Positions 9,189-60,338 of a stretch of DNA of 64,000 nucleotides are shown in pieces. The position numbers were made by a program, and so were the translations under genes. Source of the stretch: Octopus sinensis. Its lineage: Eukaryota. Under the pieces are notes generated by a model. That model was not told the origin of the DNA. It did no database searches and saw only the letters and a program-made list of their open reading frames with translations. The first letter of the stretch is position 1. Each line of letters begins with the position of its first letter. The stretch is from contig NC_042998.1 of the NCBI RefSeq assembly GCF_006345805.1, positions 195,300,001 through 195,364,000 on the forward strand. The letters run 5' to 3'.

Positions 9189-9585
9189 TACTCTCTTTTA
9201 CTCTTTTACTTGTTTCAGTCATTTGACTGCGGCCATGCTGGAGCACGGCATTTAATTGAGCAACTTGACCCCGGGACTTATTCTTTTGTAAGCCTTAGTA
9301 CTTATTCTATCGGTGTCTTTTGCCGAACCGCTAAGTAACGGGGACATAAACACACCAGCATCGGTTGTCAAGCAATGCTAGGGGGACAAACACAGACACG
9401 CATACATATATATATATACATATATACGACGGGCTTCTTTCAGTTTCCGTCTACCAAATCCACTCACAAGGCTTTGGTCGGCCCAAGGCTATAGTAGAAG
9501 ACACTTGCCCAAGGTGCCACGCAGTGGGATTGAACCCGGAACCATGTGGCTGGTAAACAAGCTACTTACCACACAGCCACTCCTG
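9189..9585 (-). mobile_element. tRNA-derived SINE (same family)
   Basis: Full-length match to 1460-1855. Confidence 0.85.
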
Positions 9586-9639
9586 TGGTGGTGATGATAA
9601 TAGTAATGGTCATGAATATGGTAATAATGTTGGTAATGA

Positions 9640-11265: not shown

Positions 11266-12174
11266 GATGACATACTAGAGCAATAATTAATTAACGATAA
11301 TAATGGAAATAAATGTGATATAATGATAACTTTGGAGGAAAGCTGGGCAGTGGTAGGTTGGCAAGATATGACATGTATTAAACACGATACAATGGATATA
11401 GTTGATTGATGCGGTGAATTTCTAGCAGATATTGTGAAGTAACCATATCAAAACATACTGCTAGCAGTAATAGTTACTTGCATTCACCAGTCATGTTCGC
11501 CTCCACTCCTGGAGGCAAACAATGCCAGTGCTGCCTAACTGGCACCCCGTGCCAGTGGCACATAAAAGGCACCATCTGAACATGGTCGATGCCAGCCCCC
11601 ACCACCCCAACTGGCTCCTGTGCTGATGGCACGTAAAAGGAGCCACCCGAACATGGACAGTGCCAGTGCCGCATGACTGGCTTCTGTGCTGGTGGCATGT
11701 AAAAAGCACCCACTACACTCTGGGAATGCATGGTATTAGGAAGGGAAGATAGAGGTTGTCAAAAGAACATGTGGAAACAAATAAGTACAACCCATGCTAG
11801 CATGGAAAACGGACGTTAAACGATGATGATGATGAAATGGTGAGGTTAGATTAAGCAATGCAGATATGGTAGAGTGAAACATATGTAGTACTATAGTGAG
11901 TTAATTGAAATTAATCTATCTGTATGTTTGAAATAAAAAAAAAAAATGCGAAACAAACAAGGGAGATAACTCCAACAAGATCATTCAATTGAAATTTTAA
12001 TATAGAAAATGTGATATGAGAGTGGATCTGGTCTTTAAAGTTGAATGGTGAAAGCAACTGAGAACCATAAGCATCATTCTGTAATATGCAAGCAAAGCCA
12101 CTTCCCTGGAATGGATATATGTAATTAGAATAAACAGTATATATTGTGTGAATGGTTGAGAAATGAGAACAGAC

Positions 12175-12333
12175 CTGCAGTAACAATGGACTTGAAACAA
12201 GATTTCTGATCAATACGGGGCCACAGGACATATTTTGCTTGAGGACGATGTTGTTTAATGGTCAGCATACACAAAACTAGGGCCATACCTGTGGCTACAG
12301 GAACGACAAAACAATTCTTCACAGAATGCACAC
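12175..12333 (-). CDS. SEPSECS: SEPSECS coding exon 4 (159 nt)
   Basis: Poly-T+CAG acceptor, GTCTGT donor; encodes [18 protein letters not shown]...[12 protein letters not shown]. Confidence 0.96.
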
Positions 12334-14563
12334 CTGAAAAAAAAAATTCAGCTTGCTAAACTACACAGCATTTTGTAAGAGAAGGGAGAACATGGTTGTT
12401 GTAATAGGCCAAGATGACCATATTAAATTCATTTGTTCATTTTACTTCCGTTTTTCCATGCTATCATGGGTTGGAGAGGTATTTGAGACAGGATTTTATG
12501 GCAGGATGTTCTTCCTGTCACCAACTCTCACCTAAGCAAATTCTTATTATACAGATCTTCAAAAGTGCAAAGCGACCAATCATAATGTCAACATATCACT
12601 GCCTTGCTCAGGCAAGTTTCCATCTTCTAAATTCACTTACAAGGCATTGGTTAGCCTTGGGCTATATTAGAAAACAATTGCCATGATTGTGCTGATTTCC
12701 CGCGTCGCCTTACTAGCACTTGTGCTGGTGGCACAGGAAACATTCGAGCGAAGACGTCGCCACCTGGCTCCTGCGCAGGTGGCACGTAAAAAGCACCATT
12801 TGGATGTGGCCATTGCCAGTACCACCAAACTGGCCCTCATGCCGGTGGCAAGTAAAAGCACCCACTACACTCTCGGAGTGGTTGGCGTTAGGAAGGGCAT
12901 CCAGCTGTAGAAACTCTGCCAGACCAGATTGGAGTCTGGTTTGCCAGACCTCAGTCAAATCGTCCAACCCATGCTAGCGTGGAAAGTGGACGTTAAATGA
13001 TGATGATGATGATTATCCAGAATTACAAAACAGGTCATATAGTTCACATCAATCAAAAGTAATCATTTGTTTTATGAAGTTCACAAGACTTTTAACTGAC
13101 TGGAATGAAACATGGAGGTAAATAAAAAGGAGTAACAGCAATCACTTGGTAGATATTACTCAGTTTTTCTGCAGACATCAATCTACAGGTGTTTAAAATA
13201 AACATCATTTGCATCAGTCTCACCAATTTCATTAATACCTTTTATCTCTTCCTTTTTTAAGTCATTTGACTGCGGCCATGCTGGGGTACCACCTTGAAAG
13301 GTTTTAGTGGAACAAATCGACCTCCAATGGTTCTCTTTTGCTAAACTGCTAAGTTATGGGGACATAAACACACCAACACTGGTTGCCAAGCAGTGATGGG
13401 GGACAAACACAAATGCACACACATACAGATCCTACATAGTATATTATATATTTAACTAGAATGATAAGATCTAACTAGCTATGATTATAAGTTCTCTCTC
13501 TGATGGTACTATTTAATACTTATTGATTTAAATTATTTGATTTATTTCTATTGGACCATATTATTAATAAATTAAATTTTGCTCTATTTTTATCTCCATT
13601 TCTTAGTCTATTTTTTAACCCATATATAAATATTAGTTAGTTAAATCTCTTAATTCTTTTACACTAAAAATTAATTCTGCTAATCCCAGACCTATCGTAG
13701 TGTATTGTGATGTGATATAATATAATATAAAATAATATGATAAAATATAGTGTAGTGTATTATAGTATAGAATAATAATATATTGTTTGATTTCATTTAA
13801 AAACAACCCCATTTTTCTTTCCTTTCTAATGACCTCTCTTTGTAACCTGACAATCTATTAATAGTAACATTTATAAATAAAGAAATAAATTGTTGACCTC
13901 AGTTCGAATTTTGCACTAAACAAGCTTAGATTTTCTGTTAGTATCAACTTGTGCCCATCCCCTTAGCTTCCCCTTTCCTTTCTCTTTGATAGCTTAAATA
14001 GCAGTAACTGATTAAATTTCTACTTCCTTCCTCCTCTTTCTGTGATTCTTGTAAAATTCATTAACAACCTGAACCGCTACAATATAAGACTGTCATTTTG
14101 CTTCTCATTCGGATTCCCTGATATTTTTCGCATGATTGTACCCTAAATCTCTTCACAAAACTGGATTATGAACTATAAGACATGCACATATTCTGTAAGT
14201 TCAAGACTTTTCATCGGATCTCCAAGAATTGAACTTATCTGCGATTCTTGTAAATTTCAATAACAATCTGTTCCTCTACACGATATGACAGTCACTTTGC
14301 TTTTACTCAGACTTTCCTCTACATGATATGGCAGTCACTTTGCCTCTTACTCGGATTTTCAGAAATTTTGCATGACTGTATCCGAAAATTTCTTCACACA
14401 ACTTGATTAAAAATTCAATATGAGCTATATGTAGACATGCACAAATTCTGTAAGTTTAAAACCTTTCATCGGATCTCCATGAATCGAACTTTCTTCAATG
14501 CAGTTAATCTTACAACCTCTTTTGTATCTACCCCTTTTGATGTTTGGGAATTCTCTGATGTTT

Positions 14564-14651
14564 TTTCGGCTGACGAGTACGAGCCATCTGTATTCACTGT
14601 ATTTTTTGTAGCTTATTAAAGATGTCCTCGTACGAAACGATCGTACCGAGA
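14564..14651 (+). ncRNA. Type I hammerhead ribozyme motif (Penelope-like, palindromic stem III)
   Basis: Stem I TTTCGG/CCGAGA; core CTGACGA 14570-14576; stem II GTACGAG/CTCGTAC; GAAA 14634-14637; C-GATC-G; GTA cleavage triplet, cut predicted after 14645. Confidence 0.85.
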
Positions 14652-14678
14652 TTTTAATCCATTCTTGTTGCTTTTTTC

Positions 14679-14719
<41 letters not shown>

Positions 14720-15842
14720 CTAGTGGGGGCGCTAAGAGCACCATTCGAGCATGATCATTGTCAGAGCAGCTAGCTGGCTGCTGTGCCAGTAGCATGTAAA
14801 AGGAACCATTCAAGCGTGATCATTACCAGTGTTGCCTTACTGGTACTTGTGCCTGTGGCATGTGAAAAGACATTCGAGTGAGGTCGTTGCCAGTACCATC
14901 TGACTGGCTCCCATGTCAGTGGCATGTAAAAGCACCCACTACACTCTCGAGTGGTTGGCGTTAGGAAGGGCATCCATCTGGTTTGCCAGTCCTCAGTCAA
15001 ATCGTCCAACCCATGCTAGAATAGAAAGTGGACGTTAAACGATGATGATGATATATATATATATTATATATATATCATCATCATCATCATTTAACGTCCA
15101 TTTTCCATGCTAGCATGAGTTGGACGGTTCGATTGGGGTGTGGGAAGCCAGGAGGCTGCACCAGGCTCCAGTCTGATCTGGCTGTGTTTCTACAGCTGGA
15201 TGCCCTTCCTAACGCCAACCACTCCAAGAGTGTAGTGAGTGCTTTTTACGTGCCAGGCCAGGCTGGCAACAGCCACGATTGGTTGGTTCTTTTTACGTGC
15301 CACCAGCATGGAGGCCAGTCGAGGCAGCGCTGGCAACGGCCACGTTCGGATACCGGCACTGGTATCACAACTACAATTTCCATTGATTTTTGATTGATTT
15401 CGATTGCCTCAACAGGTCTCTGCAAGCAGAGTTTTGTGTCCCAAGGAGGAAAGGTATGCATAAGTGGACTGGATACACACACACATACACACAACAGGTG
15501 TCTTTCAGCTTGTTTACTGAATCCAATCACAAGGTTTTGCTTGTCCTGGGCCTATAGTAGAAGACACTTGCCCAAGGTGCCACATGGTGGGACTGAACCT
15601 GGAACCACGTGGTTGGAAGCAAGCTTCTTATCTCACAGCCACACCTAAATTTCATCAGTCTAGAAGGCTTTGGAAATATCACAGGTACTATACATTTTTC
15701 TGTGACCAACATAAAAAAAGAATCTTCCCTTGTTGTCAGGACAGTAGGACCAAATGCAGTACTTTATCAACAAATTATTTTTGACAGAATGATGAATATC
15801 TAGATAAAAGGTGGAGAGGAGTCTCCATGAACAAACATTTAC

Positions 15843-15961
15843 CACTTAGTTTGATAACATCACGGGCCAAACAGTTTGTTATTTTCATTAGAACACTGGA
15901 ACCTGCTGCCTTTGGCTGGATTGCAGTGATATCTCCTGATCGACCAATTCCATGACCCAAT
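15843..15961 (-). CDS. SEPSECS: SEPSECS coding exon 3 (119 nt)
   Basis: TTTTTAAG acceptor, GTAAAT donor; encodes [22 protein letters not shown]. Confidence 0.96.
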
Positions 15962-16972
15962 CTTAAAAAGAAGACAGAAAAATTTTAAACTGTAAAACAT
16001 GAAATAATAAAATACATAAATATCCTAAAGACTTTCAAATTTTTGCAAAGTAAATATGAAGAATGGAATAATGGTGAGTTTCAATGCTGTGTTGGACTCA
16101 GCACCGTCAACTTCAGTATTAGGTTGGTACTTTATTTTACCAACCCCAGGAGACTGGAAACTGACCTTGGAAAGAATTGAACTCAAGATGTAAAGAAGAG
16201 GAACAAATATCACTAAATATCTAAAACTTATTTAAAACATCATTGTATTGTTGTTTAATTCCAAGTCAGACCTGACTGAGTATAACTGCAATAAAGCTAT
16301 CATCATTTCTGTGTTATTTTCAGGTGTAATGTATCTAGGAATGTCATCCAACACCTTAGTCATTGTGCTGTGAGTGAAAAGAGACAAATATCTTTATTTA
16401 ACTCAGTTTACTTGACTGACAAATAACTTCTACAAATGAGTTGTTAGTAAAAGATAGTTCAATAATATATGCATATAATTGCTCTGGCAATGTGCAAGTA
16501 AATGTTTGACCCTACAATCATCTTCACTTATGTTATTTAGGCAAAAATTAGTATATACTTCATACAGAATGCTAGTAATGTGGTTAAGAAGTTAGCCATG
16601 TGATATACATAATTCCAAGTAGAGCAATATTTATGAGTAGAGCAGTGAAAAAGAGGTTTTAGATGTGTGCTAGGTTGGAAAACAAGGCTGCTTATCTGAA
16701 CATCTGGTTTCTACTCTGTGTGGCGAGGTATTAAAATATGACGTAGGGGATCTGAATGAGTGAGTTTATATAGGGTGGGGTGGGTGTTGGGAGAAGCAAG
16801 TGGTTAATGAAGCTAAGAGAGAGGAAGAGAAAGAGACCAAACGATGATGATGATGATGAAACTGAGTAGAAGCCCATGTGCATGGGTGTGCATATATATA
16901 TTGGTTCACCAGCCCTCAGTCAAAATCGTCCAACCCATGCTAGCATGGAAAGCGGACGTTAAACGATGATGA

Positions 16973-17029: not shown

Positions 17030-17072
<43 letters not shown>

Positions 17073-17074
<2 letters not shown>

Positions 17075-17482
17075 CGCAGGAGTGGCTGTGTGGTAAGTAG
17101 CTTGCTAAACAACCACATGGTTCCGGGTTCAGTCCCACTGCGTGGCATCTTGGGCAAGTGTCTTCTGATATAGCCCCGGGCCGACCAATGCCTTGTGAGT
17201 GGATTTGGTAGACGGAAACTGAAAAGAAGCCCGTCGTATATATGTATATATATATATATATGTATGTGTGTGTTTGTGTGTCTGTGTTTGTCCCCCTAGC
17301 ATTGCTTGACAACCGATGCTGGTGTGTTTACATCCCCGTCACTTAGCGGTTCGGCAAAAGAGACCGATAGAATAAGTACTGGGCTTACAAAGAATAAGTC
17401 CCGGGGTCGATTTGCTCGACTAAAAGGTGGTGCTCCAGCATGGCCGCAGTCAAATGACTGAAACAAGTAAAAGAGTAAGAGT
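17073..17482 (+). mobile_element. tRNA-derived SINE (same family), following (TA)n
   Basis: GGCGCAGGAGTGGCTGTGTGG head, conserved tail. Confidence 0.85.
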
Positions 17483-22435: not shown

Positions 22436-24016
22436 TTAAGGTTGTGGAATGACAAAGTTTTGATGTTTGTTCTGGGTTTTCATGCTTTGAGTTCAAATCC
22501 TGCTGATGTCAACTTTACCTTTCATCTTTTTCCAGAGTCGATAAAATAAAGTTGAGATGTCAGAAGTGAGTAAGTAGGCCAGGTGTTAAGTGAGGTCAGA
22601 GAAGTTGCTTTCTTGGTGGATGGACATGTTGTAGCATGTTTCTAAACACCAGAATAGCTAACTGCAGAGAGAGAGAATGATTAGAAAGATTGGTGAACAT
22701 AGGAGCTATCTCTGGAGAACACTGTTTAAAAAGTAATTGAAGGGAACAATGCCAGGGCCATCAACCTTATCCTGACATAGTCATGATGACTAGCAGAGTC
22801 AGTCTTTGACCCTCCTCCTAATCAAAATAAAAGCACCAGTTATTTACTTATACTCACAAATCCTTGAGCACACTCAATAGATTAAATCTATTCTATTACA
22901 TTTTATAGACAAAAGGAAAAAAGGTAGTAAACATCAGAGTACAGTCAAGGTTAGTTAGGAGTGATAAGACAAAACAAAACAAATTCAATGTGGCAGGAGT
23001 GGAGGCGAACATGACTGGTGAATGCGAGTAACTATTACTGCTAGCAATATGTTTTGATAGGGTTACTTCACGATAAGCGCATCTTGTAAATTTATACTTT
23101 TTTAATAATGAAACCGTTTAGATTTTTAAATAGTGATTATGTATGCACACGTTTGGACTGAGGTCAAATTTGCGCTTGTGGTATCTGAGGACAACTTTAC
23201 GTCTGCGCTATCTGAGGTCAACTTTGCCTTTGTAGTATAAGTTCAAATCTGAATATGGCCAAATTGGGTGTAAACTTAACCAAATTTCCTGGTTTAAAAA
23301 TCACCACCTCGCCCACTGGGCATCTTTGACGGAGTCCATTCTGTGCAAGCATGCAGACCAAGTTTCTGGTTTAAGGATACTTTTCTCTCTGCGTACCTTG
23401 GAGGCTATGTACGGGCCATGGGAACTGCCCTTTTTTACCTGAGTGCATAAAGTAACGAGATTCTTTTAGACAACCTATTTATCTGTTTCTTTATTATCCA
23501 CAAGGGGCTAAACACAGAGGGGACAAACAAGGACAGACAAACGGATCAAGTCGATTACATCGACCCCAGTGCGTAACTGGTACTTAATTTATCGACCCCG
23601 AAAGGATAAAAGGCAAAGTCAACCTCGGCGGAATTTGAACTCAGAACGTAGCGACGGGCAAAAATACCCATACAGGATAGTTGCACCTCATAGCAGTAGT
23701 TATTGTTGTTTATTCGCATGTTGTTAACTGCTATTAACCTGATGTATGATCAAAGTTATGTTAGCCATCACCGTTCTGTGTGTGTCGGAATACTTTAGCC
23801 AATGCCTCTTTTCCTTTCTCGGATAGTGGATCTGAGGGAGAACTGGAAGTTATTTCTAGCATGACAAGCGACCACACCTAAGCCCCATCGTTGAATGACA
23901 ACCTAAGGTGTATATAGTTATTGAGATACCTGGCGCTGTTAATCCTCTGACGTTTTCTGAAGACTTTTTTTCTATTAGAAATGAGAAGGCAAGAATTTAG
24001 TAAAATATAGCAGACA

Positions 24017-24019
<3 letters not shown>

Positions 24020-24057
<38 letters not shown>

Positions 24058-24105
24058 CAGAGAGAGAGAGAAAGAGAGAGAGAGAGTCAGAGAGAGAGAG
24101 ACAGA
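24020..24105. repeat. (GA)n microsatellite
   Basis: Direct reading. Confidence 0.95.
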
Positions 24106-24627
24106 GTAGATGTTAAAGCACCAACGGAAAGCTATTGTAACACTAATTTATCATGCTACATACCGGTAAATGCTCATCAATACACTGCACAGTTAGTATA
24201 ATATGAAGAGTGGCAAAAATATTAAATAACCTTTAAAAAAAAGTCGCACAGCAGCAAGCAATTATCAAAATAACAATTACGCCGGTTAATTGATAAAAAC
24301 GGTGTTAGACGAAGAAAGTTCCCGGTGCTAATTTAGAATATAAATTTTGATATAACACCGGTAAAATTTATATTTTGAAACATCGTACTTTTGTGAAACA
24401 TATGTGTTGATGTGTGTCACAAATATTGAACGAAAAAATTAAATTTTATATTAGCAAATTTCCACGTGAAGTATTCTGTACCGTTTATTCCTTTCTGTAG
24501 AGCAAAAATCGGCAAACTTTTTGTGAGGTGGGCCGTATTGAAAATGATTTTATTTCTTGTAGGCTTCTCAAACTGGCCTTCAAACTGAAAAGATCCAAAA
24601 TTACTTCTACAATTTATGAAAACTTTT

Positions 24628-24966
24628 GAAAATATATATATATAATCTATATATATATATATCTATATATATATGTATATATATATATATCTATATATCT
24701 ATATATATCTATATTATATATCTATATATATCTATATCTATATATATCTATATCTATATCTATATATATCTATATCTATATCTATATATATATCTATATA
24801 TATATATCTATATATATATATATCTATATATATATATATCTATCTATCTATATATATATATATAATCTATATATATATATCTATATATATATCTATATAT
24901 CTATATATATATATTATATATATATATATATCTATATTATATATATATATATCTATATATATATAA

Positions 24967-25014
<48 letters not shown>

Positions 25015-25126
25015 CTATATATATATACATATCTATATATATTCTATATATATATATATCTATATATATATATATATATCTATATATATATCTATATATA
25101 TATATATCTATATATATATCTATATA
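24628..25126. repeat. (TA)n/(TATATC)n microsatellite
   Basis: Direct reading. Confidence 0.95.
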
Positions 25127-25496
25127 GGTTATAAAATGAGATAGGGGTTGAAAATTCAAGCCACCATGGGATAATATATATCCAATATACTGCTAGATAG
25201 GTACCCAACAAAATTAATACATAGATGTTAAAAATTGTCAAACAATCAGTTCATCTATTGCATTATATGGGTAAAGGTAATAATATTACCGTAAATTAAT
25301 ACTACAAAATTAGAGAATGGAGAAATATACTTAAATCAGTAAAACATCAACTATCCGATGAAACTCAATCCATACTTTAATACACCATTACATATTAGTA
25401 AAGGCAATACATAAAATGAAATGAGATATACAGTAATAGTAAAAAGATAAAGAGATATAAGTAAAAAATTTTCAAATATGATATGCAAATAGATCA

Positions 25497-25609
25497 AAAC
25501 TGACAGCTGTTTCGGCAGTGAGGACAGTCATACCTCATTTAACCTATAAGCCATAAAGGCAGGTATAAATGAGGCATTAACAAGGATGCCCCACGGCCTC
25601 TTCAGAGAA
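25497..25609 (-). ncRNA. Mirror copy of the hammerhead-like motif in the left palindrome arm
   Basis: Reverse complement of 26900-27012; core spans 25502-25605. Confidence 0.6.
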
Positions 25610-25954
25610 TTAAATTAATTTGTTATAATAGTGAAAAATATTATACAATCATATACATATAAATATAAAAATATAAAAATGTAAAATATAAAAACTTATA
25701 CATCATAATGCTACACTTATATAATATAATACACATTTGTACAAAAAAGGAAGGTAAACAGAACAAAATAAAACAAAATATATAATAGTGTATATATTAA
25801 TATCAATAAGTACCGATATTATACATATTTGGCTAATAGTTTTTTTTAAAATATATATAAAAAAGAGCTAACATATATGGAGATGAAAAACAATAATTAA
25901 ATCCGTGGTACAGTTCATAAGATTCTAAAGTTATAAAAGTTAATAAAAATTACT

Positions 25955-25998
<44 letters not shown>

Positions 25999-26506
25999 TA
26001 ATAAAAAAATATAAAAATATAATAAAAAAATAGATACAGTTAAGTTAGCACCAAGTCCATCCTTACAAGATCGAAATAACTATGAGTTAAGAAATGCTGA
26101 CCACTAGGTAAAGAAAATATAGATTAATTCGATTGGCTATTGGTTTGAAATTTAAATCACAAAAGAAAATTATACGGTTGGTTAGTCAAGGAACGCCAAT
26201 ATTCACACACGCATCTACAGATCAATCGCACATACACCCATAGTTATATGTATATGTATACACTTATACACATACATAATTACAAGCAACAACTAGCACA
26301 TAGATAAACAAAAAGGGAAGTAACCAACCGTATAATTTTCTTTTGTGATTTAAATTTCAAACCAATAGCCAATCGAATTAATCTATATTTTCTTTACCTA
26401 GTGGTCAGCATTTCTTAACTCATAGTTATTTCGATCTTGTAAGGATGGACTTGGTGCTAACTTAACTGTATCTATTTTTTTATTATATTTTTATATTTTT
26501 TTATTA

Positions 26507-26553
<47 letters not shown>

Positions 26554-26899
26554 AGTAATTTTTATTAACTTTTATAACTTTAGAATCTTATGAACTGTAC
26601 CACGGATTTAATTATTGTTTTTCATCTCCATATATGTTAGCTCTTTTTTATATATATTTAAAAAAAAACTATTAGCCAAATATGTATAATATCGGTACTT
26701 ATTGATATTAATATATACACTATTATATATTTTGTTTTATTTTGTTCTGTTTACCTTCCTTTTTTGTACAAATGTGTATTATATTATATAAGTGTAGCAT
26801 TATGATGTATAAGTTTTTATATTTTACATTTTTATATTTTTATATTTATATGTATATGATTGTATAATATTTTTCACTATTATAACAAATTTAATTTAA

Positions 26900-27012
26900 T
26901 TCTCTGAAGAGGCCGTGGGGCATCCTTGTTAATGCCTCATTTATACCTGCCTTTATGGCTTATAGGTTAAATGAGGTATGACTGTCCTCACTGCCGAAAC
27001 AGCTGTCAGTTT
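26900..27012 (+). ncRNA. Type I hammerhead-like motif in the right palindrome arm
   Basis: CTGAAGA 26904-26910; stem II GGCCGTGGGG/CCTCACTGCC with a long hairpin insert; GAAAC-AGCT-GTC, cut predicted after 27007; stem I weak (2 Watson-Crick pairs, then U-U). Confidence 0.6.
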
Positions 27013-27208
27013 TGATCTATTTGCATATCATATTTGAAAATTTTTTACTTATATCTCTTTATCTTTTTACTATTACTGTATATCTCATTTCATTTTATGT
27101 ATTGCCTTTACTAATATGTAATGGTGTATTAAAGTATGGATTGAGTTTCATCGGATAGTTGATGTTTTACTGATTTAAGTATATTTCTCCATTCTCTAAT
27201 TTTGTAGT

Positions 27209-27490
27209 ATATATCTATATATATATCTATATATATATATATATAATATATCTATATATATATATCTATATATATATCTATATATATATATCTATATATA
27301 TATATATCTATATATATATATATCTATATATATATATATATATCTATATATATATATATCTATATATATATATATATATCTATATATATATATATATATA
27401 TATCTATATATATATATATATATATCTATATATATATATATATCTATATATATATATATATATCTATATATATATATATATATATATATA

Positions 27491-27525
<35 letters not shown>

Positions 27526-27615
27526 ATATCTATATATATATATCTATATCTATATATATATCTATATATATATCTATATATATATATATATATATCTATA
27601 TATATATAATATATA

Positions 27616-27656
<41 letters not shown>

Positions 27657-27844
27657 ATATATATATATCTATATATATATCTATATATATATATATATAT
27701 ATCTATATATATCTATATATCTATATATATATATATCTATATATCTATATATATATATCTATATAATATATATATATATCTATATATATATATATCTATA
27801 TATCTATAATATATATATATATATAATATATATATATATATATC

Positions 27845-27897
<53 letters not shown>
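27209..27897. repeat. (TA)n/(TATATC)n microsatellite
   Basis: Direct reading. Confidence 0.95.
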
Positions 27898-27899
<2 letters not shown>

Positions 27900-28249
27900 A
27901 GTGGCTGTGTGGTAAGTAGCTTGCTAACCAACCACATGGTTCCGGGTTCAGTCGGCAAGTGTCTTCTGCTATAGCCCTGCACCGACCGATGCATTGTGAG
28001 TGGATTTTGTAGGCGGAAACTGAAGGAAGCCTGTCGTATATATGTATGTGTGTTTGTCCCCTTAGCATTGCTTGACAACCGATGCTGGTGTGTTTACGTC
28101 CCCGTCACTTAGCGGTTCGGCAAAATAGACCGATAGAATAAGTACTGGCCTTACAAGGAATAAGTCCCGGGGTCGATTTGATCGACTAAAGGCGGTGCTC
28201 CAGCATGGCCGCAGTCAAATGACTGAAACAAGTAAAAGAATAAAAGAGA
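27897..28249 (+). mobile_element. tRNA-derived SINE (same family), following (TA)n
   Basis: Same head and tail, small internal deletion. Confidence 0.85.
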
Positions 28250-29829: not shown

Positions 29830-30911
29830 CATGTATTTGTATATATGGCTCCCATGCAGGTAGCATGTAAAAAGTACCATTTGAACATGATTGATGCTAG
29901 TGCTGCCTGACTTGCACCCGTGCCGGTGGCACGTTAAAAGGCACCATTCAAGCATAGTCGATACCAATGCTACCTGACTGGCTCCGTGGCACATATAAAA
30001 GGCAACCGCTACACACTCAAACAGCATCCAGCTGTAGAAATCTTGCCTGATAAGATTGAAACCTTGTTCAACCTCATGGCTTGCCAGTCCTTAGTCAAAC
30101 CTCACAACCCATGCCAGCGTGGAAAGCAGATGTTAAACGATGATGATGAAGGTAGGGAAAGAGCGATATCTATTTTAGCAAACAAAGATACAAGACTGCA
30201 ATGAAAACATCAGAAATCTAGTGTCATTTATATGTATATTGGTGTGTGTGTATGTGGAAGTGTGTCTATGACAGACTTTATATTCCAGGAGTTGGTATTA
30301 TAATAGATGTGTCTCCGCTATGATATAAACATTTTGCTAATGCAGAAATTGGATGAATTTAATAGTTCAGATAAAGAATTACATCTAGAATTTTTGAAAC
30401 AAGAAATGTCGTAAATTTGCACTTTTGAATATCTGCCTTTTAAACATACTTCATATCTTATATTATTTTCCTATTCTTTCAGAAAATCACATGAAATTGG
30501 CTAAAAAGTAATTTTTACTTTTAAAGAATCATCAATGTGTTTCATGTTTAAACGACTCTGCAAAGATATTCGATAAACGTATAATCCTGCTTCTATAAAA
30601 CGTTGCTGAGTTACAGTAAAATATTTCCTCTGAGAGAGAAAGCATTTCTTTACTTCTGTGTCTGAAATGTGGAAGAGATAATTTTCTCTTTTAAATATAC
30701 TTTGATAGATTTCCAAAGAATATTTGCGGCATTTTTAAATATTGGCATTGATCACATTTAGAAGAAATATAAGAGAAGTGATATTTGTTTGGAATAAGCT
30801 ATAAAAGCAAAAAGAAGAAAAATATCCATATATTTTGGTGAGAGAAGAAATATTTTTGAAAAGTTGTTGATCTGTACAACTAAAAGGTTCAGTTTTATTT
30901 TTCTTGAAGAG

Positions 30912-32702
30912 ATGTCGGAAGAATTAGGAAAATCATCATATGACTGTGACATCTGCAAAGAGTCATTCTTAGAAGAAAGTAAACTCAATCAACACAAACA
31001 AATTCATGCAGGGGAAGCACCATATCACTGTGATATCTGTGGTAAATCATTGTCTCACAGGAATAGCTTAACTCAACACAAACGTATTCATACAGGAGAG
31101 AAACCATATCACTGTGATATCTGTGGTAAATCATTCTCTAATGGCAGTCACTTAACTCGACACAAACGGGTTCATACAGGAGAGAAACCTTATCATTGTG
31201 ATATCTGTGGTAAATCTATCTCTAATAGCAGTCACTTAACTCGACACGAACGGGTTTATACAGGAGAGAAACCTTATCATTGTGATATCTGTGGTAAATC
31301 ATTCTCTAATAGCAGTCACTTAACTCGACACAAACGGGTTTATACAGGAGAGAAACCTTATCATTGTGATATCTGTGGTAAATCATTCTCTAATAGCAGT
31401 CACTTAACTCGACACAAACGGGTTTATACAGGAGAGAAACCTTATCATTGTGATATCTGTGGTAAATCCTTCAATTTAGGGAGTAACTTGACATCTCACA
31501 AACACATTCATACAGGGGAAGCACCAAATCAAAGTGATATCTGTGGTAAATCATTCTCTAATGGCAGTCACTTAACTCGACACAAACGGGTTCATACAGG
31601 AGAGAAACCTTATCATTGTGATATCTGTGGTAAATCCTTCACTTCAGGAAGTAACTTGACATCTCACAAACACATTCATACAAGGAAGAAACCATATCAC
31701 TGTGATATTTGTGGTAAATCATTGTGTCACAGGAATAGCTTAACTCAACACAAACGTATTCATACAGGAGAGAAACCATATCACTGTGATATCTGTGGTA
31801 AATCATTCTCTATTGGCAGTCACTTAACTCAACACAAACGGGTTCATACAGGAGAGAAACCTTATCATTGTGATATCTGTGGCAGATCCTTCACTTCAGG
31901 AAGTAACTTGACAACTCACAAACACATTCATACAGGGAAGAAACCATATCACTGTGATATCTGTGGTAAATCATTCTATCGAGAAGGTAACTTAAGTAGT
32001 CACAGACGGGTTCACGGTGGGGACAAACCGTATCATTGTGATATCTGTGGTAAATCCTTCACTTCAGGAAGTAGCTTGGCATCTCACAAATGTATTCATA
32101 CAGGGGGGAAACCATATCACTGTGATATCTGTGGTAAATCTTTCTCTGATGGAAGTAGCGTAACTACGCACAAACGTACTCATACAGGGGAGAAACCATA
32201 TTCCTGTGAAATCTGTGGTAAATCTTTCTCTCAAAGCAGCAGCTTAACTAAGCACAATCGTATTCATACAGGCGAGAAACCATATCACTGTGATATCTGT
32301 GGTATATCATTCTCTCACAACACTACCCTAACTACGCACAAACATATTCATACGGGGGAGAAACCATATCACTGTGATATCTGTGGTATATCATTCTCTC
32401 AAAACACTACCCTCACAACGCACAAACGTATTCATACAGGAGAGAAGCCATATTCCTGCGATAGCTGTGGTAAATCATTCTCTCAGAACAGTGTCTTAAC
32501 TAAACACAAGCGTATTCATACAGGGGAGAAACCATATCACTGTGATATCTGTGGTAAATCATTCTCTAATGGCAGTCACTTAACTCGACACAAACGGGTT
32601 CATACTGGAGAGAAACGTTATCATTGTGATATGTGTGGAAGATCGTTCTCCGAAAGCAGCAGCTTAACTAAACACAAGTGTATTCATACAGGGGCGGAAT
32701 GA
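30912..32702 (+). CDS. Polydactyl C2H2 zinc-finger protein, copy A (596 aa, 21 finger repeats, 4 degenerate)
   Basis: True ATG at 30912 after a polypyrimidine/AG acceptor; 28-aa CxxC-x12-HxxxH repeats with TGEKP linkers; no KRAB/BTB/SCAN/ZAD domain seen. Confidence 0.9.
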
Positions 32703-34405: not shown

Positions 34406-35526
34406 TAATATAATAATAATAATATAATAATAATGAAATTATTGTATACAGTGCTCAGGTGCACCACAACTTGTCAAAAGTGCATATAAAGTACATGCAG
34501 TAATATAGAAATGTCTGGAAAGCGAACAATGTATGTGTCAGATACATGCTTGTGTGTGTATGGAGGGGAGAAAATCAAGTGTAGCGTTGGCGGATCTCAG
34601 GAAGCATGGAAGTTTTGAAGGATGCAGTGCTCCGACAACTAACAACTGATGCCGGCAGTTTGTTCCATGCTTCAGCAACTCTCAGCATGAAAAAATGTTT
34701 CCTGAAGTCATGGGAACTGCTGTTTTCTTACTTTGTAAATATGTCCACGGGTGTTAGATGGGTGGAGTTTGAAAAGGTGCTCAGAGTTATTGTTTGTACG
34801 ATGGTTGATAATTTTATGGGTGTCTGCCACTTCAACTGCCAGACGTCGGAGTTTCAATGTGTCCATGCCCAGGGAAGTAAGGCGTTCAGGATATGGCAAA
34901 TGCCTGATGGAGGGTATTCTTTTGGTTGCACGTCGCTGAACAGCTTCCAGACGATTGATATCCTGGGCAAGATAGGGGTTGCAGACCGGTGATGCAAATT
35001 CCAGGTGAGGTCTTACCATAGCTATATAAAGCCGCAGATGTATAGCCGGAGTGCGGCTCACAAAGGATTTGGTGAGTGATGCCAAGACACCCTCAGCCTT
35101 CTTGACAATTTTAGCGATGTGTTTTGTCCAACGCAAATCACTGTCGACAATAACACCCAGGTCACGTTCACATGAAGACTTTTTGAGACTAGTGTTGTGG
35201 AGGGAGTAGGTGGACGCTGGGTTTCTCCCAAAAGGCATGGTGGTACATTTGTCCTCAGCCAGCTTGAGTTGCCAGTCCATGATCCACTGCTGCATTGTGT
35301 CCAGGTCTGCTTGCAAAAGAGATCTATAGTGTACAGGATTTGACCTCTTTATTTCGAGGTACAGCTTGATGTCATCTGCATATTTCAGCACTGTGGCATT
35401 CTTTAAGTTGGCATCTATGTCATTAACATATGCAACAAATAAAAGGGGGCCAAGAACAGATCCCTGTGGTACACCAGATGTCATCTCATAGGGCGAAGAG
35501 TACTGTCCTAGAACTGTGACAACCTC
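34406..35526 (-). mobile_element. 5'-truncated CR1/L2-type LINE (RT C-half plus (ATT)n tail)
   Basis: ORF 34708-35484: GVPQGSVLGPLLF, YADD, ERDLGV, VRPHLEFAS, LEAVQRRATK; simple-repeat tail at 34406-34435. Confidence 0.9.
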
Positions 35527-37593: not shown

Positions 37594-40500
37594 TTGAACT
37601 TTCATCTGCGTTTTGAGAAGTTTGCTGCCTTTTGTTGAGAGAGTTAGATTTTTTGCTCATCGTTGTTTGTGTTTGTTGTTGATTGAACGGTGCCCGTTGT
37701 GTAACGGTGGTTTTCGCCCTGCGGGGCGGAGAATTCTGTGTTTGAAATTGTTGTTGCCTTCGAGGTGGTTTTTGAAACATTTTTGAGAAATGGATTTCGA
37801 CTTGGCGTCGAGGAATGATTTTCCCGCGATGGTGAATTGGGGGACACTGAAGTGGCAAAACGGTCTTTTTCGGCCGCGGTGGGCGGAACCATGATGGACG
37901 TTGAATCCAGGATCGAACAGCTGTTCGAATTTGGGAACTTTGTAAAGGTGGAGGGAGGCGAAATCGAGCTTGTGCCGCCGCAGGCGAAGGTGCAAGAGGC
38001 AGAGGAAGGAACAGTTGTATACAAGGTGTATAGCTGCAAGGAGGGGAAAATTATGGACGTTAGAAGCGAGATGGTCGAGGAGTGCTTGTCCCCGGTGTGG
38101 GACGGGATTCGCCGTGTCGTTCGAGGTGCTCGCAGTGCTGCTGTTGAATCACATTTTGACTCGGCTGAGGTGGCAGGAGAGGTGTCATCTGTGACCCTGA
38201 AAAATGATGATATCATGTTGCTGCCCTCGTGTATGGGGGTGGGGAGCGGCTGAGCTGCTGGTGGAGGACGTACCGAGAGGGTGTGATATAGTGTGTGGGT
38301 GGCAGCGGCGGTCCTGCGCAATGTTGAGCGGGAGGTTTCGATTCTGCGGATGAGAGGGAGGGAGGAGGTGCGCTGGAGGGGACGGACGCTGGAGCTCCTC
38401 GTTCAGGCGGAGAACAAGATGTTGGAGAGCCTGCCCGATGGGATGTTTGATGAGGATGGAGCGTCCATGGGAGTGTCAGTGGAGGGGCGCAGACCTAGGT
38501 GTTTTGAGTGTGGCGAGAGGGGTCACGTCCGCTCGAGCTGCTTAAAGGAGAGGAAAGACAACGAGGCCCCTCCTCAAGGTGCTTCAAGCACTGAAGGGGA
38601 GTGGGCGGAGGGGGAGAGCAGGACGACGACGGGCAGGGAAGCAGAGGCGGATGGATTGCACACGGGTGACACACAGAGGAAAGAAGGATAACACCCTGGA
38701 CTCCCCTCCCCAAACAAGGAAAAAATCAGCAAGCACCGCAGACATACACACAAAGCAAATTCCCCAGCCCTACCCCCACGGCACTGTATTCATTGGAAAA
38801 TAGTTCGCCAAGCCCCTCCCCATAAAACAAGATGTGAAAAAGTCTTTAAAAAAAAATGATAATATCATTGCATTTGATGAAAAAAACGAGAGGGTATATA
38901 AATACTTTAAATTTTCCAAATTTAAACTATTTAGCAAGGCTACAGACATAAAAGCAACCACTCGCTTCGCAAAAATAAAGGAAGACGAGTGGAAGGAGGA
39001 AATACTACAAGAACATCTAAAGAATAGACTGATAAGAGACGTAACAAAGGAAGTACTGGAGGGTAAACTTGTTATAACCCCGGCAACCACACCTACCCAG
39101 AGCCCGGTGGCAACGCCGGTTAAGAGCCCTGCAGCTACGACCACAAGGGAGGAAGAAGGGGAAGCGGGCAGATTTAAACTGTCATGCTCCCTTTCTCAAC
39201 CGTAAGTTCATTTATTTTTTCTCTCACCGACAATGGCTAAGCTGGGTTGTGTGAATGTACGTGGAATGGGGACGAAATGGAAACAAATTTGTTTCCTGAA
39301 CGACCTCACGACACATGGAGTGGACATAGCTATTGCAACCGAGTCCAAGATGAACGAGGCCCAAGCGTTCTCGCCTCTTCTAAATGGGTTCGAGAAATTT
39401 ATTTCTCCTAGCCGAGGAAGAGGCAGAGGCATGGCAGTCCTTATCAGGAAGAGCTTGGACTTGCAGGTAAGTACTGTCTTTCTGGACCCAGAAGGCAGGC
39501 TGGTTGTTCTGGATGTGACCCACGTAAGTAAACAGTCCTTCAGGTTGGTAGCTGGGAAGTAACTCGGATGAGATCGGAGGTGGGAGGACGGTTACTGCTT
39601 ATGCGGATGACGTCACCCTCATCGTGTCCAATGAGGCCCAGCTACCTTGTGTGGAAGAGGCTATCAGAGGATACGAGGCGGTGGCAGGAGCAAAGGTTAA
39701 CAAGGACAAGTCGGTTGGCTTGCGCCTCGGCACCTGGAGGAGCAAGTCGATATCGTCCAGTGTCGTGGGACACTGGACGGATGGCCCTGTTAAGTTGCTA
39801 GGAGTTTGGTTTGGACCAGACTCCCAAACGGAGAGGAACTGGAGTGAGGTGACGAGCAAGGTGGAGGCCATAGTACGGACCTGGTCCGGAAGGTTTCTGT
39901 CCTTGAAAGGAAGGGTGGAGGTGGTACAGATGTTCATTGCATCTGTAATCACTTACCGCCTGACCGTTGTCCCTTGCCCCGATTTATGGCTTAGCAAGTT
40001 GGAGCGAATCCTTTTCCGCTTTTTGTGGAAGGGAGGAAAGCCACTTGTGAGGCGCTCCGTTTGCTGCCAGGAACCGTTAAAGGGTGGGTTAGGAATGCCT
40101 TGGTTGATGATGCGCAGACATGCGTTGAGGCTGAAGCATCTCTGGCACCACCTGGAGGGTGATAAGGTGTGGAGTCCGCTGGCAGGGGAATTTTTCCCGA
40201 GACCGGCCTCCTTAGAGAATTTTAAACCCGGTCGCATCAAAAGATGGAAACTGACTTTATGGCAAAAGGAGTGCCGACACGCACTCACGCTGATCCACAA
40301 GGCGGGCAAGGCCGGCTGCGGAAATACCACCTCGGTATTTTATAGAAGGCTGGTAGAGGCAAAGAACGACGACGTCCTAGGAGGGGCTCTGGGGTTTGAC
40401 GAAGACCAGCTTACCAACCTGTTTAAAAAGACTTTCAGGACGGGGTATTTGGATAATTTCCAAAGATCCCTGGCCTGGCAGTGCTATAGGAATGCTTTAC

Positions 40501-41206
40501 CTGTTCGCGAGAAGTTATCGCGGCACGGAATTTCAGTGCCACCGACGTGTCCAAGGTGCGAGTTGGACGATGAAACCGTCCAGCACGCTTTTGTACACTG
40601 TCGGAAGTTGTCCGACTTGATAAGTTACGCAGAACACGTGTTATCGCATCTGGGACGAGTACAGCTGTCGGCTGAGTCTATGATTAAGAGGATACCGCCA
40701 ACTGGACTCTCGAAGGAAGGTGAGGCATGTTTTCACTGCACGGTTGCAGTAGTAAAAGAATGCATGTGGCGTACAAGAATGGAAGGAGTCGCGATAGGAT
40801 CCTTTGTCTCGGGCCCCGGCTTGCTCACTTACTTCAGATATCATCTGAAGAGCAAAATGGGGCTGGAAAAGAGGATCTTACCACGGGGTGTGTATGAGAA
40901 AAGATGGAAGGAAGTGGGTTAAAAGGTGGGTGTCAGAAACCCAGCTTAACTATGGAGGGAGGAGATGAAAAAAAAGCTGCGGGGCCTTATAAATTGCCGG
41001 GGTTTAAAACTTCGGTAAGATCGAAAGTTTATGTAATGTTATAATATTCTATTGGTCATGTAAAGGACAATTTACAGACGAATTTTTATAATGAATAATC
41101 CAAATGTTATGGAAAATTTTTAATCGAACCTCTTAACTGTTTTTTGCATGTATGTCCTGTATTTGTCCTTCTATGTAACGATTGTATAATCATAATAAAG
41201 AAATAC
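37594..41206 (+). mobile_element. Tx1/L1-clade non-LTR retrotransposon, internally deleted, copy 1
   Basis: TSD GGAGTTAGTTCCC at 37581-37593 and 41207-41219; ORF1 with CCHC knuckle CFECGERGHVRSSC; ORF2 with APE N-terminus (NVRG, DIAIATE), AYADD at 39597-39611 and C-terminal CPRC...H...C; AATAAA at 41194. Confidence 0.9.
39233..40922 (+). pseudogene. Tx1-like ORF2 remnant: APE N-half joined out of frame to RT from YADD onward
   Basis: 39233-39562 is the endonuclease N-terminus ending RLVAGK*; another frame opens at 39552 and reads GSNSDEIGGGRTVTAYADDVT through to the zinc-binding C-terminus. Confidence 0.85.
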
Positions 41207-47374: not shown

Positions 47375-47778
47375 ACTCTTTTACTTGTTTCAGTCAGTTG
47401 ACTGCGGCCATGCTGGAGCACCACCTTTAGTCGAAAAAATCGACCCCGGGACTTATTCTTTGTAAGCCTAGTACTTATTCTATCAGTCTATTTTGCCGAA
47501 CCGCTAAGTGACGGGGACGTAAACACACCAGCATCGGTTGTCAAGCAATGCTAGGGGGACAAACACAAACACACAAACATATACACACACACATACATAT
47601 ATATATACGTATATACGACAGGCTTCTTTCAGTTTCCGTCTACCATATCCACTCACAAGGCATTGGTCGGCCCGAGGCTATAGCAGAAGACACTTGCCCA
47701 AGATGCCATGCAGTGGGACTGAACTCGGAACCATGTGGTTCGTAAGCAAGCTACTTACCACACAGCCACTCCTGCGCC
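47375..47778 (-). mobile_element. tRNA-derived SINE inserted only in the copy B 3' flank
   Basis: Empty site GGATAAACAGC in the A (~35735) and C (~61645) flanks; ATA(A) duplicated around the insertion. Confidence 0.85.
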
Positions 47779-53248: not shown

Positions 53249-53349
53249 GGAGTTAGTTCCCGTTGTTCTTCCTCATTAAGAGTATTTCTTGTTCTTGTTT
53301 CCCACGCACCTTGATTGCTTGATCAGTTCCACTTGACAACTGATATTTA

Positions 53350-55638: not shown

Positions 55639-58672
<3,034 letters not shown>

Positions 58673-60284: not shown

Positions 60285-60295
60285 TAATATAATAA

Positions 60296-60338
<43 letters not shown>

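What the first reader, a model, noticed from the sequence alone, without database searches (positions are those of the whole stretch)
14564..14651. Fully paired hammerhead ribozyme hidden in SEPSECS intron 3, antisense to the gene
All type I core elements are present: stem I UUUCGG/CCGAGA, CUGACGA, a perfect 7-bp stem II extended by CAUCU/AGAUG, GAAA, and GUA. Stem III is a single C-G pair around GAUC inside the 8-nt palindrome ACGAUCGU. Minimal hammerheads with palindromic stem III are an established hallmark of Penelope-like elements and non-LTR retrozymes, and can work as dimers. The motif lies ~35 nt before a (TA)n run at the end of an AT-rich ~1.2-kb block with no ORF, so it may mark an unannotated non-autonomous ribozyme-bearing family (inference). 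It cannot cut SEPSECS pre-mRNA because it is on the opposite strand.
Basis: partly seen in the sequence, partly recalled or inferred. Interest (0 to 1): 0.85.

Follow-up and report, generated by a model that had tools for sequence, protein, structure and literature searches.

The report
Lone hammerhead ribozyme relic in intron
A complete type I hammerhead ribozyme motif sits on the strand opposite SEPSECS in intron 3, and it is most likely an ordinary leftover of a Penelope-like or retrozyme-type mobile element, not something the host gene uses.

Summary

The motif is not chance. A metazoan/PLE-style descriptor finds only this site on either strand and expects 0.0033 hits per random window.

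Rfam support is weak. Hammerhead_1 matches end to end only in a 106-nt scan, at 21.4 bits against a gathering score of 34. A 47-nt insertion in loop II costs the score.

The monomer's best fold is inactive, about 5-6 kcal/mol better than the HHR fold. The predicted best dimer is the classical double hammerhead.

The HHR ends a 1,222-bp AT-rich non-coding block. That block sits in the internal microsatellite of an older SINE and abuts (TA)n. The window holds no second HHR, no copy of the block and no RT/GIY-YIG ORF.

I read it as a solitary, probably inert terminal fragment or non-autonomous derivative of a Penelope-like element (PLE). Such intronic single copies are common in animals that carry PLEs. 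Genomic copy number, stem covariation and cleavage could not be tested. It is a new member of a known kind, of low interest.

The parts
14564..14569 (+). Helix I, 5' strand (UUUCGG)
   Evidence: Pairs with 14646-14651 over 6 bp, one of them G-U.
14570..14576 (+). Catalytic core box C3-A9 (CUGACGA, N7 = C)
   Evidence: Read directly. Aligned to the core of Rfam RF00163.
14577..14633 (+). Helix II: GUACGAG 14577-14583 pairs with CUCGUAC 14627-14633 (7 bp, G10.1-C11.1). Extended by CAUCU 14585-14589 pairing with AGAUG 14620-14624 around a 30-nt loop (14590-14619).
   Evidence: Rfam treats 47 nt here as an insertion where the model has 4.
14634..14637 (+). Core box G12 A13 A14 plus A15.1 (GAAA)
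14637..14644 (+). Helix III and loop 3: A15.1-U16.1 and C15.2-G16.2 around GAUC. This is the 8-nt palindrome ACGAUCGU, which can form an 8-bp helix III between two molecules.
   Evidence: Only occurrence in the window. The predicted best dimer structure uses it as the helix III of a double hammerhead.
14645..14646 (+). Predicted cleavage site: after A17 (14645), before C1.1 (14646)
   Evidence: Follows from standard HHR numbering applied to the sequence. Cleavage was not tested.
14646..14651 (+). Helix I, 3' strand (CCGAGA)
13455..14676 (+). HHR-bearing block: 1,222 bp, AT-rich (GC 0.307), non-coding. The HHR ends 25 nt before its 3' end. It is single-copy in the window.
   Evidence: No other copy by BLAST. 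No stop-free segment longer than 85 aa and no credible Pfam hit. GC.
14036..14491 (+). Internal two-copy tandem repeat (U1 14036-14237, U2 14238-14491, about 75-81% identical), just upstream of the HHR segment
   Evidence: Not significantly similar to the HHR segment.
14677..14719 (.). (TA)n(TG)n microsatellite abutting the 3' end of the block
13239..13454 (.). Left half of an older ~390-bp SINE copy, broken at its internal microsatellite
   Evidence: Alignment with four full-length copies from the window and BLAST.
15456..15650 (.). Right half of the same SINE copy. About 2 kb of later insertions lie between the two halves.
14716..15426 (.). Two inverted copies of a second short repeat (14716-15052 and 15074-15426), tail to tail at an (AT)n. 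They are further insertions into the same microsatellite.
15841..15963 (-). SEPSECS exon 3
   Evidence: tblastn, 73% identity over 41 aa, E 5e-13.
12170..12340 (-). SEPSECS exon 4
   Evidence: tblastn, 68% identity over 57 aa, E 6e-24. PF05889 is recorded on homologues of exon 7.

Best explanation
The motif is a genuine hammerhead ribozyme sequence by descent. It is of the metazoan type I, dimer-dependent kind: a 1-bp helix III capped by a palindromic tetraloop.

It lies about 25 nt from the 3' end of a 1.2-kb non-coding retroelement fragment. That fragment is most likely the terminal (pLTR/3') part of a 5'-truncated Penelope-like element, or a PLE-derived non-autonomous element (a retrozyme-type single copy). 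It inserted into the (CA)n(TA)n microsatellite inside an older SINE in SEPSECS intron 3, in the orientation opposite to the gene.

In the parent element, two such HHRs in a tandem or multimeric transcript would pair through their palindromes into a double hammerhead. They would cut after GUA and so trim the element's RNA to unit length.

At this locus there is only one copy. Its own best fold sequesters the core, because ACGA of CUGACGA pairs with UCGU of the palindrome. It is therefore expected to be essentially inactive alone and to have no role in SEPSECS expression.

Shown: the motif, its non-random nature, the strand, the intron, the nested-insertion anatomy, the absence of coding remnants, and the fold predictions. 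Inferred: PLE ancestry, dimer-dependent cleavage, and lack of host function.
For: Motif and significance:
- Every core position and the G10.1-C11.1 pair are present.
- This is the only hit of two descriptors in 128 kb of sequence. Random expectation is 0.0033 per window for the metazoan/PLE-type descriptor and about 2.6e-4 for the observed stem lengths.
- Rfam Hammerhead_1 aligns end to end (model positions 1-45 of 45) at exactly 14564-14651 on the + strand.

Fold predictions:
- The helix III architecture matches published metazoan type I HHRs that cleave poorly alone and well as dimers (PMC4209133, PMC7229834).
- The predicted best dimer (-49.0 kcal/mol) is the double hammerhead, against -43.0 for two separate monomers. 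The monomer HHR fold scores -15.8 against -21.5 for its best fold. In a 151-nt context the figures are -22.7 against -27.8.

Context:
- The HHR lies near the 3' end of an insertion that abuts (TA)n. Canonical PLEs carry HHRs in pLTRs near their 3' ends and show an insertion bias for microsatellites (PMC8557442; PMC11167929).
- The two SINE halves flanking the insert define a nested insertion.
- PLEs and Hammerhead_1 hits are documented in cephalopod genomes.
- Intronic single copies are common.
Against: - No RT or GIY-YIG remnant lies in the block or anywhere in the window.
- There is no second pLTR or HHR and no other copy of the block, so the PLE link rests on architecture and position only.
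- The Rfam score is below gathering (21.4 against 34). Scaled from the 106-nt scan to the whole window, the E-value is about 1.6 (my estimate).
- The motif lacks the bulged nucleotide between A9 and 10.1 that is typical of PLE min-HHRs.
- It has an unusual 42-nt helix II extension.
- Other repeats also landed in the same microsatellite, so the target site is not specific to PLEs.
- The organism (a cephalopod, probably an octopod) is inferred from my memory of the SINE and from the ZNF arrays. It was not tested.
Confidence: 0.7

Rival explanations
1. It is a single copy of a non-LTR retrozyme or an HHR-bearing SINE-like or satellite element (as with newt satellite 2, Schistosoma Sm-alpha or mussel retrozymes). 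It would have been copied from a circular or multimeric RNA, and would not be a piece of an autonomous PLE.
For: The block is non-coding with GC 0.31, inside the published '<45%' range for retrozymes. It carries a canonical-type helix III, not the helix-III-less PLE min-HHR. Single copies of retrozyme families are frequent and often intronic. The HHR is intact and not split at the cut site, which is what copying from an uncleaved or circular template would give (inference).
Against: The defining tandem array with one HHR per unit is absent. The neighbouring 2-copy repeat has no significant similarity to the HHR segment (p about 0.1-0.9). The 2026 preprint argues that retrozymes are themselves pLTR derivatives of PLEs, so this reading largely merges with the best explanation.
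Confidence: 0.2
2. It is a chance assembly of hammerhead-like boxes and complementary runs in AT-rich repeat-derived DNA, with no ribozyme ancestry.
For: The Rfam score is below the gathering threshold and the hit appears only in a very narrow scan. No second copy was found. Extrapolating my 2.6e-4 per window to a genome of a few Gb predicts a handful of chance motifs with stems this long when the palindrome is ignored (my estimate).
Against: Expectation per window is 0.0033 for the PLE-type descriptor and 2 in 7,644 for the observed stems. Several hallmarks were not required by the first descriptor yet are present: G10.1-C11.1, the perfect 8-nt palindrome, the extra 5-bp helix II extension, and the position at the 3' end of an insertion next to (TA)n. 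Real type I HHRs number in the hundreds in a cephalopod genome, far above the chance expectation.
Confidence: 0.06
3. It is a host-retained (exapted) ribozyme that processes an antisense or independent plus-strand transcript in the SEPSECS locus. The amniote intronic hammerheads HH9 and HH10 would be the precedent.
For: The core is perfectly intact and 18 stem pairs are unbroken, in an intron otherwise made of decayed repeats. The two internal tandem units next to it are only 75-81% identical.
Against: I could obtain no conservation data. The only related locus I retrieved, from a distant species, shares only the exon. The monomer is predicted to misfold and has no partner copy. Nothing indicates plus-strand transcription. 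The exapted amniote examples lie in the sense strand of their introns (my recollection, not checked in the library), and Rfam gave no HH9 or HH10 hit. Intactness is equally explained by a young insertion.
Confidence: 0.04

Closest known systems
Metazoan type I hammerheads with a 1-bp helix III and palindromic tetraloop (newt/axolotl satellite-2 HHR_Amex1 type; Rfam RF00163 Hammerhead_1)
   Same: Same topology (open helix I). Same core, including CUGAcGA and GAAAC. 6-bp helix I. Helix III is a single pair plus A15.1-U16.1 around a self-complementary tetraloop. A double-hammerhead dimer is predicted. The Rfam consensus aligns end to end.
   Different: Helix II is 7 bp plus a 5-bp extension and a 30-nt loop, where the canonical form has 4 bp and a short loop that contacts loop 1. 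I could not identify the loop 1/loop 2 tertiary-contact nucleotides. It is a single copy, not part of a ~330-bp tandem array. The score is below Rfam gathering.
Hammerheads in the pLTRs of Penelope-like elements (Cervera & de la Pena 2014; PAc Poseidon of Anolis, Mob DNA 2024)
   Same: Long helix II (7-8 bp in PLE min-HHRs). Palindromic positions around helix III. Position close to the 3' end of the inserted unit. The insertion abuts a microsatellite. Most genomic copies are solitary and are attributed to truncated PLEs.
   Different: No RT/GIY-YIG ORF and no second pLTR here. The motif lacks the bulged nucleotide between A9 and 10.1, and it has a real, if minimal, helix III/loop 3, which most PLE min-HHRs lack.
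Animal non-LTR retrozymes (Cervera & de la Pena 2020; Li, Clavereau & Pollet preprint 2026)
   Same: Non-coding, low-GC carrier of a type I HHR. Single-copy derivatives are common and about 43% of them lie in introns in Xenopus. Proposed descent from PLE pLTRs.
   Different: No tandem repetition of the HHR unit. At 1.2 kb the carrier is longer than the reported consensus range (51-972 bp). CircRNA expression is unknown.
Amniote intronic hammerheads (Rfam HH9 and HH10)
   Same: An HHR located inside an intron of a protein-coding gene.
   Different: Those lie in the sense strand, are ultraconserved and fold as monomers (my recollection, not checked in the library). This one is antisense, of unknown conservation and predicted to be dimer-dependent. 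No Rfam hit to those families.

Membership tests
Hammerhead ribozyme, type I (Rfam RF00163) | Conserved core: C3 U4 G5 A6 N7 G8 A9, G12 A13 A14, the A15.1-U16.1 pair, and H17 not G | tested here: met
   CUGACGA 14570-14576, GAAA 14634-14637, U 14644, A17 14645.
Hammerhead ribozyme, type I (Rfam RF00163) | Three helices around the core with helix I open-ended (type I), and G10.1-C11.1 closing helix II | tested here: met
   Helix I is 6 bp, helix II is 7 bp starting G-C, helix III is a hairpin.
Hammerhead ribozyme, type I (Rfam RF00163) | Covariance-model score at or above the curated gathering threshold (34 bits) | tested here: not met
   21.4 bits, E 0.0027, in a 106-nt scan only. No hit in the whole-window gathering scan or in the 601-nt E<=10 scan. 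The loss is due to the 47-nt loop II insertion.
Hammerhead ribozyme, type I (Rfam RF00163) | Loop 1/loop 2 tertiary contacts that give fast cleavage at physiological Mg2+ | tested here: inconclusive
   Helix II is capped by a 42-nt extended hairpin. No closed loop 1 or extended helix I appears in the 151-nt context fold. The contact nucleotides cannot be assigned from one sequence.
Hammerhead ribozyme, type I (Rfam RF00163) | Site-specific Mg2+-dependent self-cleavage after H17 | not testable with these tools
   Needs in vitro transcription of monomer and dimer constructs.
Dimer-dependent metazoan HHR (double hammerhead) | Helix III of 1-2 bp capped by a 2-4-nt palindromic loop, so that two copies form one extended helix III | tested here: met
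   ACGAUCGU 14637-14644 is a perfect 8-nt palindrome. The predicted best dimer structure (-49.0 kcal/mol) is the double hammerhead. Criterion taken from PMC4209133.
Dimer-dependent metazoan HHR (double hammerhead) | A second HHR copy nearby (tandem repeat) to supply the partner | tested here: not met
   No second HHR on either strand of the 64-kb window. The palindrome is unique in the window.
Penelope-like element (PLE) | A single ORF encoding a telomerase-like RT plus a GIY-YIG endonuclease | tested here: not met
   No coding remnant in 13440-14700. The RT fragments elsewhere in the window are LINE-type (RVT_1, zf-RVT), and none of the four ORFs scanned gave a GIY-YIG hit.
Penelope-like element (PLE) | Two direct pLTRs, each carrying an HHR | tested here: not met
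   One HHR only and no direct repeat of the block. This is compatible with a 5'-truncated copy but does not show one.
Penelope-like element (PLE) | HHR near the 3' end of the inserted unit, and insertion bias for microsatellites such as (TA)n | tested here: met
   The HHR ends 25 nt before the end of the block, which abuts (TA)n(TG)n inside a SINE microsatellite. Criterion from PMC8557442 and PMC11167929. Not specific: other repeats inserted at the same place.
Penelope-like element (PLE) | Min-HHR signature: an extra nucleotide between A9 and 10.1, helix II of 7-8 bp, helix I of 4-5 bp, and helix III absent or minimal | tested here: inconclusive
   Helix II of 7 bp fits. There is no bulged nucleotide, helix I is 6 bp, and a tetraloop helix III is present, as in the 'canonical-like' PLE variants of flies, rotifers and shrimps.
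Animal non-LTR retrozyme | Short tandem repeats (about 170-400 bp) each containing a type I HHR | tested here: not met
   Single HHR. The adjacent two-unit tandem 14036-14491 is not significantly similar to the HHR segment.
Animal non-LTR retrozyme | Non-coding, with GC below 45% | tested here: met
   GC 0.307 over 1,222 bp, with no ORF or Pfam hit. Criterion from PMC7229834.
Animal non-LTR retrozyme | Expressed as small circular RNAs | not testable with these tools
Any HHR-bearing repeat family | Multiple homologous genomic copies with compensatory changes in helices I and II | not testable with these tools
   The source genome is not in the searchable collections. The metagenome scan gave 2 chance matches and the viral scan gave 0. 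The closest SepSecS-bearing contig is a distant species with no intron similarity. Two window ORFs are not on record.

The most novel reading that the evidence does not exclude
The 1.2-kb AT-rich block is one copy of a multi-copy, so far unannotated non-autonomous element of cephalopods. It would be mobilised by PLE machinery, and its hammerhead would carry a conserved ~42-nt helix II extension and cleave only in trans or as a dimer. That would be a distinct HHR subtype and carrier architecture: longer than known retrozyme units and not tandem.
Probability: 0.15. Interest if true: 0.4.

Novelty: new member of a known kind. Interest (0 to 1): 0.2.

Why it matters
It matters little for the host. 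The motif is on the wrong strand to touch SEPSECS pre-mRNA, and it is predicted to be inactive alone.

Its value is as annotation. It marks a PLE or retrozyme-lineage insertion that standard Rfam scanning at gathering threshold misses, because of a long helix II insertion. HHR counts in cephalopod genomes made with Rfam cut-offs (for example 235 in the giant squid) may therefore be underestimates.

If the same block proves to be a multi-copy family with a conserved extended helix II, it would add a variant to the catalogue of animal ribozyme-bearing retroelements.

Tried and rejected
1. **Tandem units as decayed HHRs.** By eye, U1 and U2 (14036-14491) looked like decayed HHR units. Local alignment against dinucleotide shuffles showed no significant similarity, with 59/500 and 187/500 shuffles scoring as well. 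The head of the third segment did no better. Rejected.

2. **Rfam at normal settings.** There was no hit in the whole window at gathering, and none in 601 nt at E<=10. Only the 106-nt scan recovered Hammerhead_1.

3. **Orthologous intron.**
   - A protein search with SEPSECS exon 7 returned only short exon-sized ORFs, at best 89% identical.
   - The best contig, L001, shares only the exon at 82% nucleotide identity and has no HHR. No comparative data were possible.
   - Two window ORFs are not on record in the assembly index.

4. **Family-specific DNA pattern** (CTGANGAGTACG N{25,55} CGTACGAAAC). The metagenome scan gave 2 hits. Neither is a hammerhead at the matched site (read by eye). The viral scan gave 0 hits.

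5. **Coding remnants of a PLE in the block.** The ten longest stop-free segments gave nothing credible in Pfam.

6. **PLE ORFs elsewhere in the window.** I found only LINE-type RT fragments.

7. **Protein search with frames overlapping the HHR.** I considered translating these to fish for TE copies among spurious ORF calls. I did not run it, because the SEPSECS result showed no close relative of this genome in that database, so the expected yield did not justify the cost.

Full report
**1. Is it there?**

Yes. Reading 14400-14800 and extracting 14564-14651 gives:

UUUCGG-CUGACGA-GUACGAG-C-CAUCU-[30 nt]-AGAUG-UC-CUCGUAC-GAAA-C-GAUC-G-U-A-CCGAGA

- Helix I is 6 bp with one G-U.
- Helix II is 7 Watson-Crick pairs, starts with the usual G10.1-C11.1, and is extended by CAUCU/AGAUG.
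- Helix III is A15.1-U16.1 plus C15.2-G16.2 around GAUC. This makes the perfect palindrome ACGAUCGU (14637-14644), which occurs only once in the window.
- H17 is A14645, so the predicted cut lies between 14645 and 14646.

**2. Is it more than chance?**

I wrote a type I descriptor: CUGANGA, helix II, GAAA, helix III, UH, helix I.

- It finds this site and nothing else on either strand.
- Across 7,644 random windows with the same dinucleotide transitions, the lenient descriptor gives 0.072 hits per window. Hits with stems as long as observed (helix I >=6, helix II >=7) occurred twice, about 2.6e-4 per window.
- A metazoan/PLE-style descriptor (palindromic helix III of 0-6 nt, optional bulge, C3-G8 or U3-A8) again finds only this site and expects 0.0033 per window.

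At window scale the motif is not chance. Over a genome of a few gigabases a few chance motifs with such stems would be expected. The palindrome, the G10.1-C11.1 pair and the genomic position are additional hallmarks that the first descriptor did not require.

**3. Covariance models**

- Rfam at gathering threshold finds nothing in the window.
- An E<=10 scan of 601 nt also misses it.
- A 106-nt scan returns RF00163 Hammerhead_1 at exactly 14564-14651 on the + strand, model positions 1-45 of 45, at 21.4 bits (gathering 34) and E 0.0027.

The printed alignment shows near-identity to the family consensus (CUGAcGAG...GAAACG..CGU), with the score lost to a 47-nt insertion where the model has a 4-nt loop II. 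Scaled to the whole window, I estimate the E-value at about 1.6.

**4. Gene context**

tblastn with a human SEPSECS sequence recalled from memory gives seven collinear minus-strand exon hits. E-values run from 6e-24 to 6e-11 for six of them, with a weaker first exon at 1e-3.

- Exon 3 is 15963-15841 and exon 4 is 12340-12170.
- Homologues of the exon 7 ORF carry PF05889 SepSecS.

The motif is therefore in intron 3 and antisense to the gene. The pre-mRNA contains only its reverse complement, which is not a hammerhead: there are no minus-strand hits.

**5. Anatomy of the surroundings**

Intron 3 is a mosaic of repeats. A ~390-bp SINE is present in at least six copies in the window. Its copy here is split at its internal (CA)n(TA)n microsatellite into 13239-13454 and 15456-15650. 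Between the halves, in order, lie:

- a 1,222-bp block (13455-14676; GC 0.307) that is unique in the window;
- (TA)n(TG)n at 14677-14719;
- two inverted copies of a second short repeat, meeting at an (AT)n.

The hammerhead ends 25 nt before the 3' end of the unique block. The block has no stop-free frame longer than 85 aa and no credible Pfam hit. It contains a two-unit tandem repeat (14036-14491, 75-81% identity).

By eye, those units seemed to contain decayed hammerhead halves. Alignment scores are no better than shuffles, so I reject that idea. There is no tandem array of ribozyme units.

No PLE ORF exists in the window. The RT fragments are LINE-type, with RVT_1 and zf-RVT domains.

**6. 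Folding**

- For the 88-nt motif, the best monomer fold (-21.5 kcal/mol) keeps helices I and II but pairs ACGA of the core with UCGU of the palindrome. The hammerhead fold scores -15.8.
- In a 151-nt context, the best fold (-27.8) loses helix I, and the constrained hammerhead fold scores -22.7.
- For two copies, the predicted best dimer structure (-49.0, against -43.0 for two separate monomers) is the classical double hammerhead. It has an 8-bp intermolecular helix III and swapped helix I strands.

This matches published behaviour. Metazoan type I HHRs with a single-pair helix III and a palindromic tetraloop cleave poorly alone and well as dimers. A single axolotl motif cleaved 6% in one hour (PMC7229834; PMC4209133).

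**7. What it most likely is**

Canonical PLEs carry hammerheads in their pLTRs near the 3' end of the unit. They are usually 5'-truncated and show an insertion bias for microsatellites (PMC8557442).

[quoted passage not shown] Reverse transcription, and hence the 3' end of genomic copies, starts 111-118 bp into the ORF, roughly 85-90 bp downstream of the cut (PMC11167929).

Most genomic PLE-type HHRs are solitary and are attributed to truncated PLEs. A 2026 preprint argues that animal retrozymes are pLTR derivatives and finds about 43% of Xenopus copies in introns.

PLEs are well represented in Octopus vulgaris, with 31 recently active families (PMC13282606). The giant squid genome has 235 Hammerhead_1 hits (PMC6962438).

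I think the source organism is a cephalopod, probably an octopod. This rests on my recollection of the SINE and on the C2H2 zinc-finger arrays, and I did not test it.

My best explanation, at about 0.7 confidence, is a solitary terminal fragment or non-autonomous derivative of a PLE-lineage element. It is inserted antisense in SEPSECS intron 3, and its ribozyme is a relic with no host role.

**8. Rivals**

| Rival | Confidence |
|---|---|
| Retrozyme or SINE-like single copy with no autonomous PLE origin (largely overlaps the best explanation) | about 0.2 |
| Chance motif | about 0.06 |
| Exapted host ribozyme acting on a plus-strand transcript | about 0.04 |

**9. What could not be done**

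I could not obtain homologous copies.

- The metagenome pattern scan gave two chance matches, and the viral scan gave none.
- The closest SepSecS-bearing contig is from a distant species with no intron similarity.
- Two window ORFs are not in the assembly index.

Copy number, stem covariation, transcription and cleavage therefore remain open. These are the decisive tests.

**10. Verdict**

This is a new member of a known kind and of low interest. The one practical point is that the long helix II insertion hides such motifs from Rfam scans at gathering threshold.

Noticed in passing
window 30982-64000: Segmental tandem duplication of about 12 kb carrying long C2H2 zinc-finger ORFs (30864-32702, 43596-45548, 55639-58672) and LINE fragments. 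35737-45665 matches 47780-57701 at 96.2% over about 10 kb, and 30982-38100 matches 56887-64000 at 93.4%.
   Followed up: partly
window 13239-13454 and 15456-15650; full copies at 1460-1860, 9190-9590, 47370-47780, 17070-17480 (rc): A ~390-bp SINE with an internal (CA)n(TA)n microsatellite occurs in at least six copies. In intron 3 its microsatellite has taken about 2 kb of nested insertions, so it acts as an insertion hotspot.
   Followed up: yes
window 14716-15052 and 15074-15426: Two copies of a second abundant short repeat with a (GAT)n tail sit in inverted orientation, tail to tail around an (AT)n. They form an 83-nt inverted repeat (81% complementary) plus shorter perfect arms.
   Followed up: partly
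window 34708-35484 (-), 39624-40922 (+), and duplicates at 60615-61391 and 51667-52964: LINE-type reverse-transcriptase fragments (Pfam RVT_1 E 4e-15; zf-RVT E 1e-10), plus a weak, below-cutoff zinc-knuckle hit (zf-CCHC, E 0.0065) in the ORF at 38293-38691. No GIY-YIG hit in the four ORFs scanned.
   Followed up: partly
window 14573-14576 versus 14641-14644: Because N7 is C, the core tetranucleotide ACGA repeats the first half of the helix III palindrome. It can therefore pair with UCGU, a built-in competitor fold that would keep a lone copy inactive. I do not know whether this is a family feature or a coincidence.
   Followed up: partly
window 24001-28000: Very AT-rich stretch (GC 0.145-0.25) full of (TA)n-type microsatellites, located upstream of SEPSECS exon 1 (21285-21175).
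   Followed up: no
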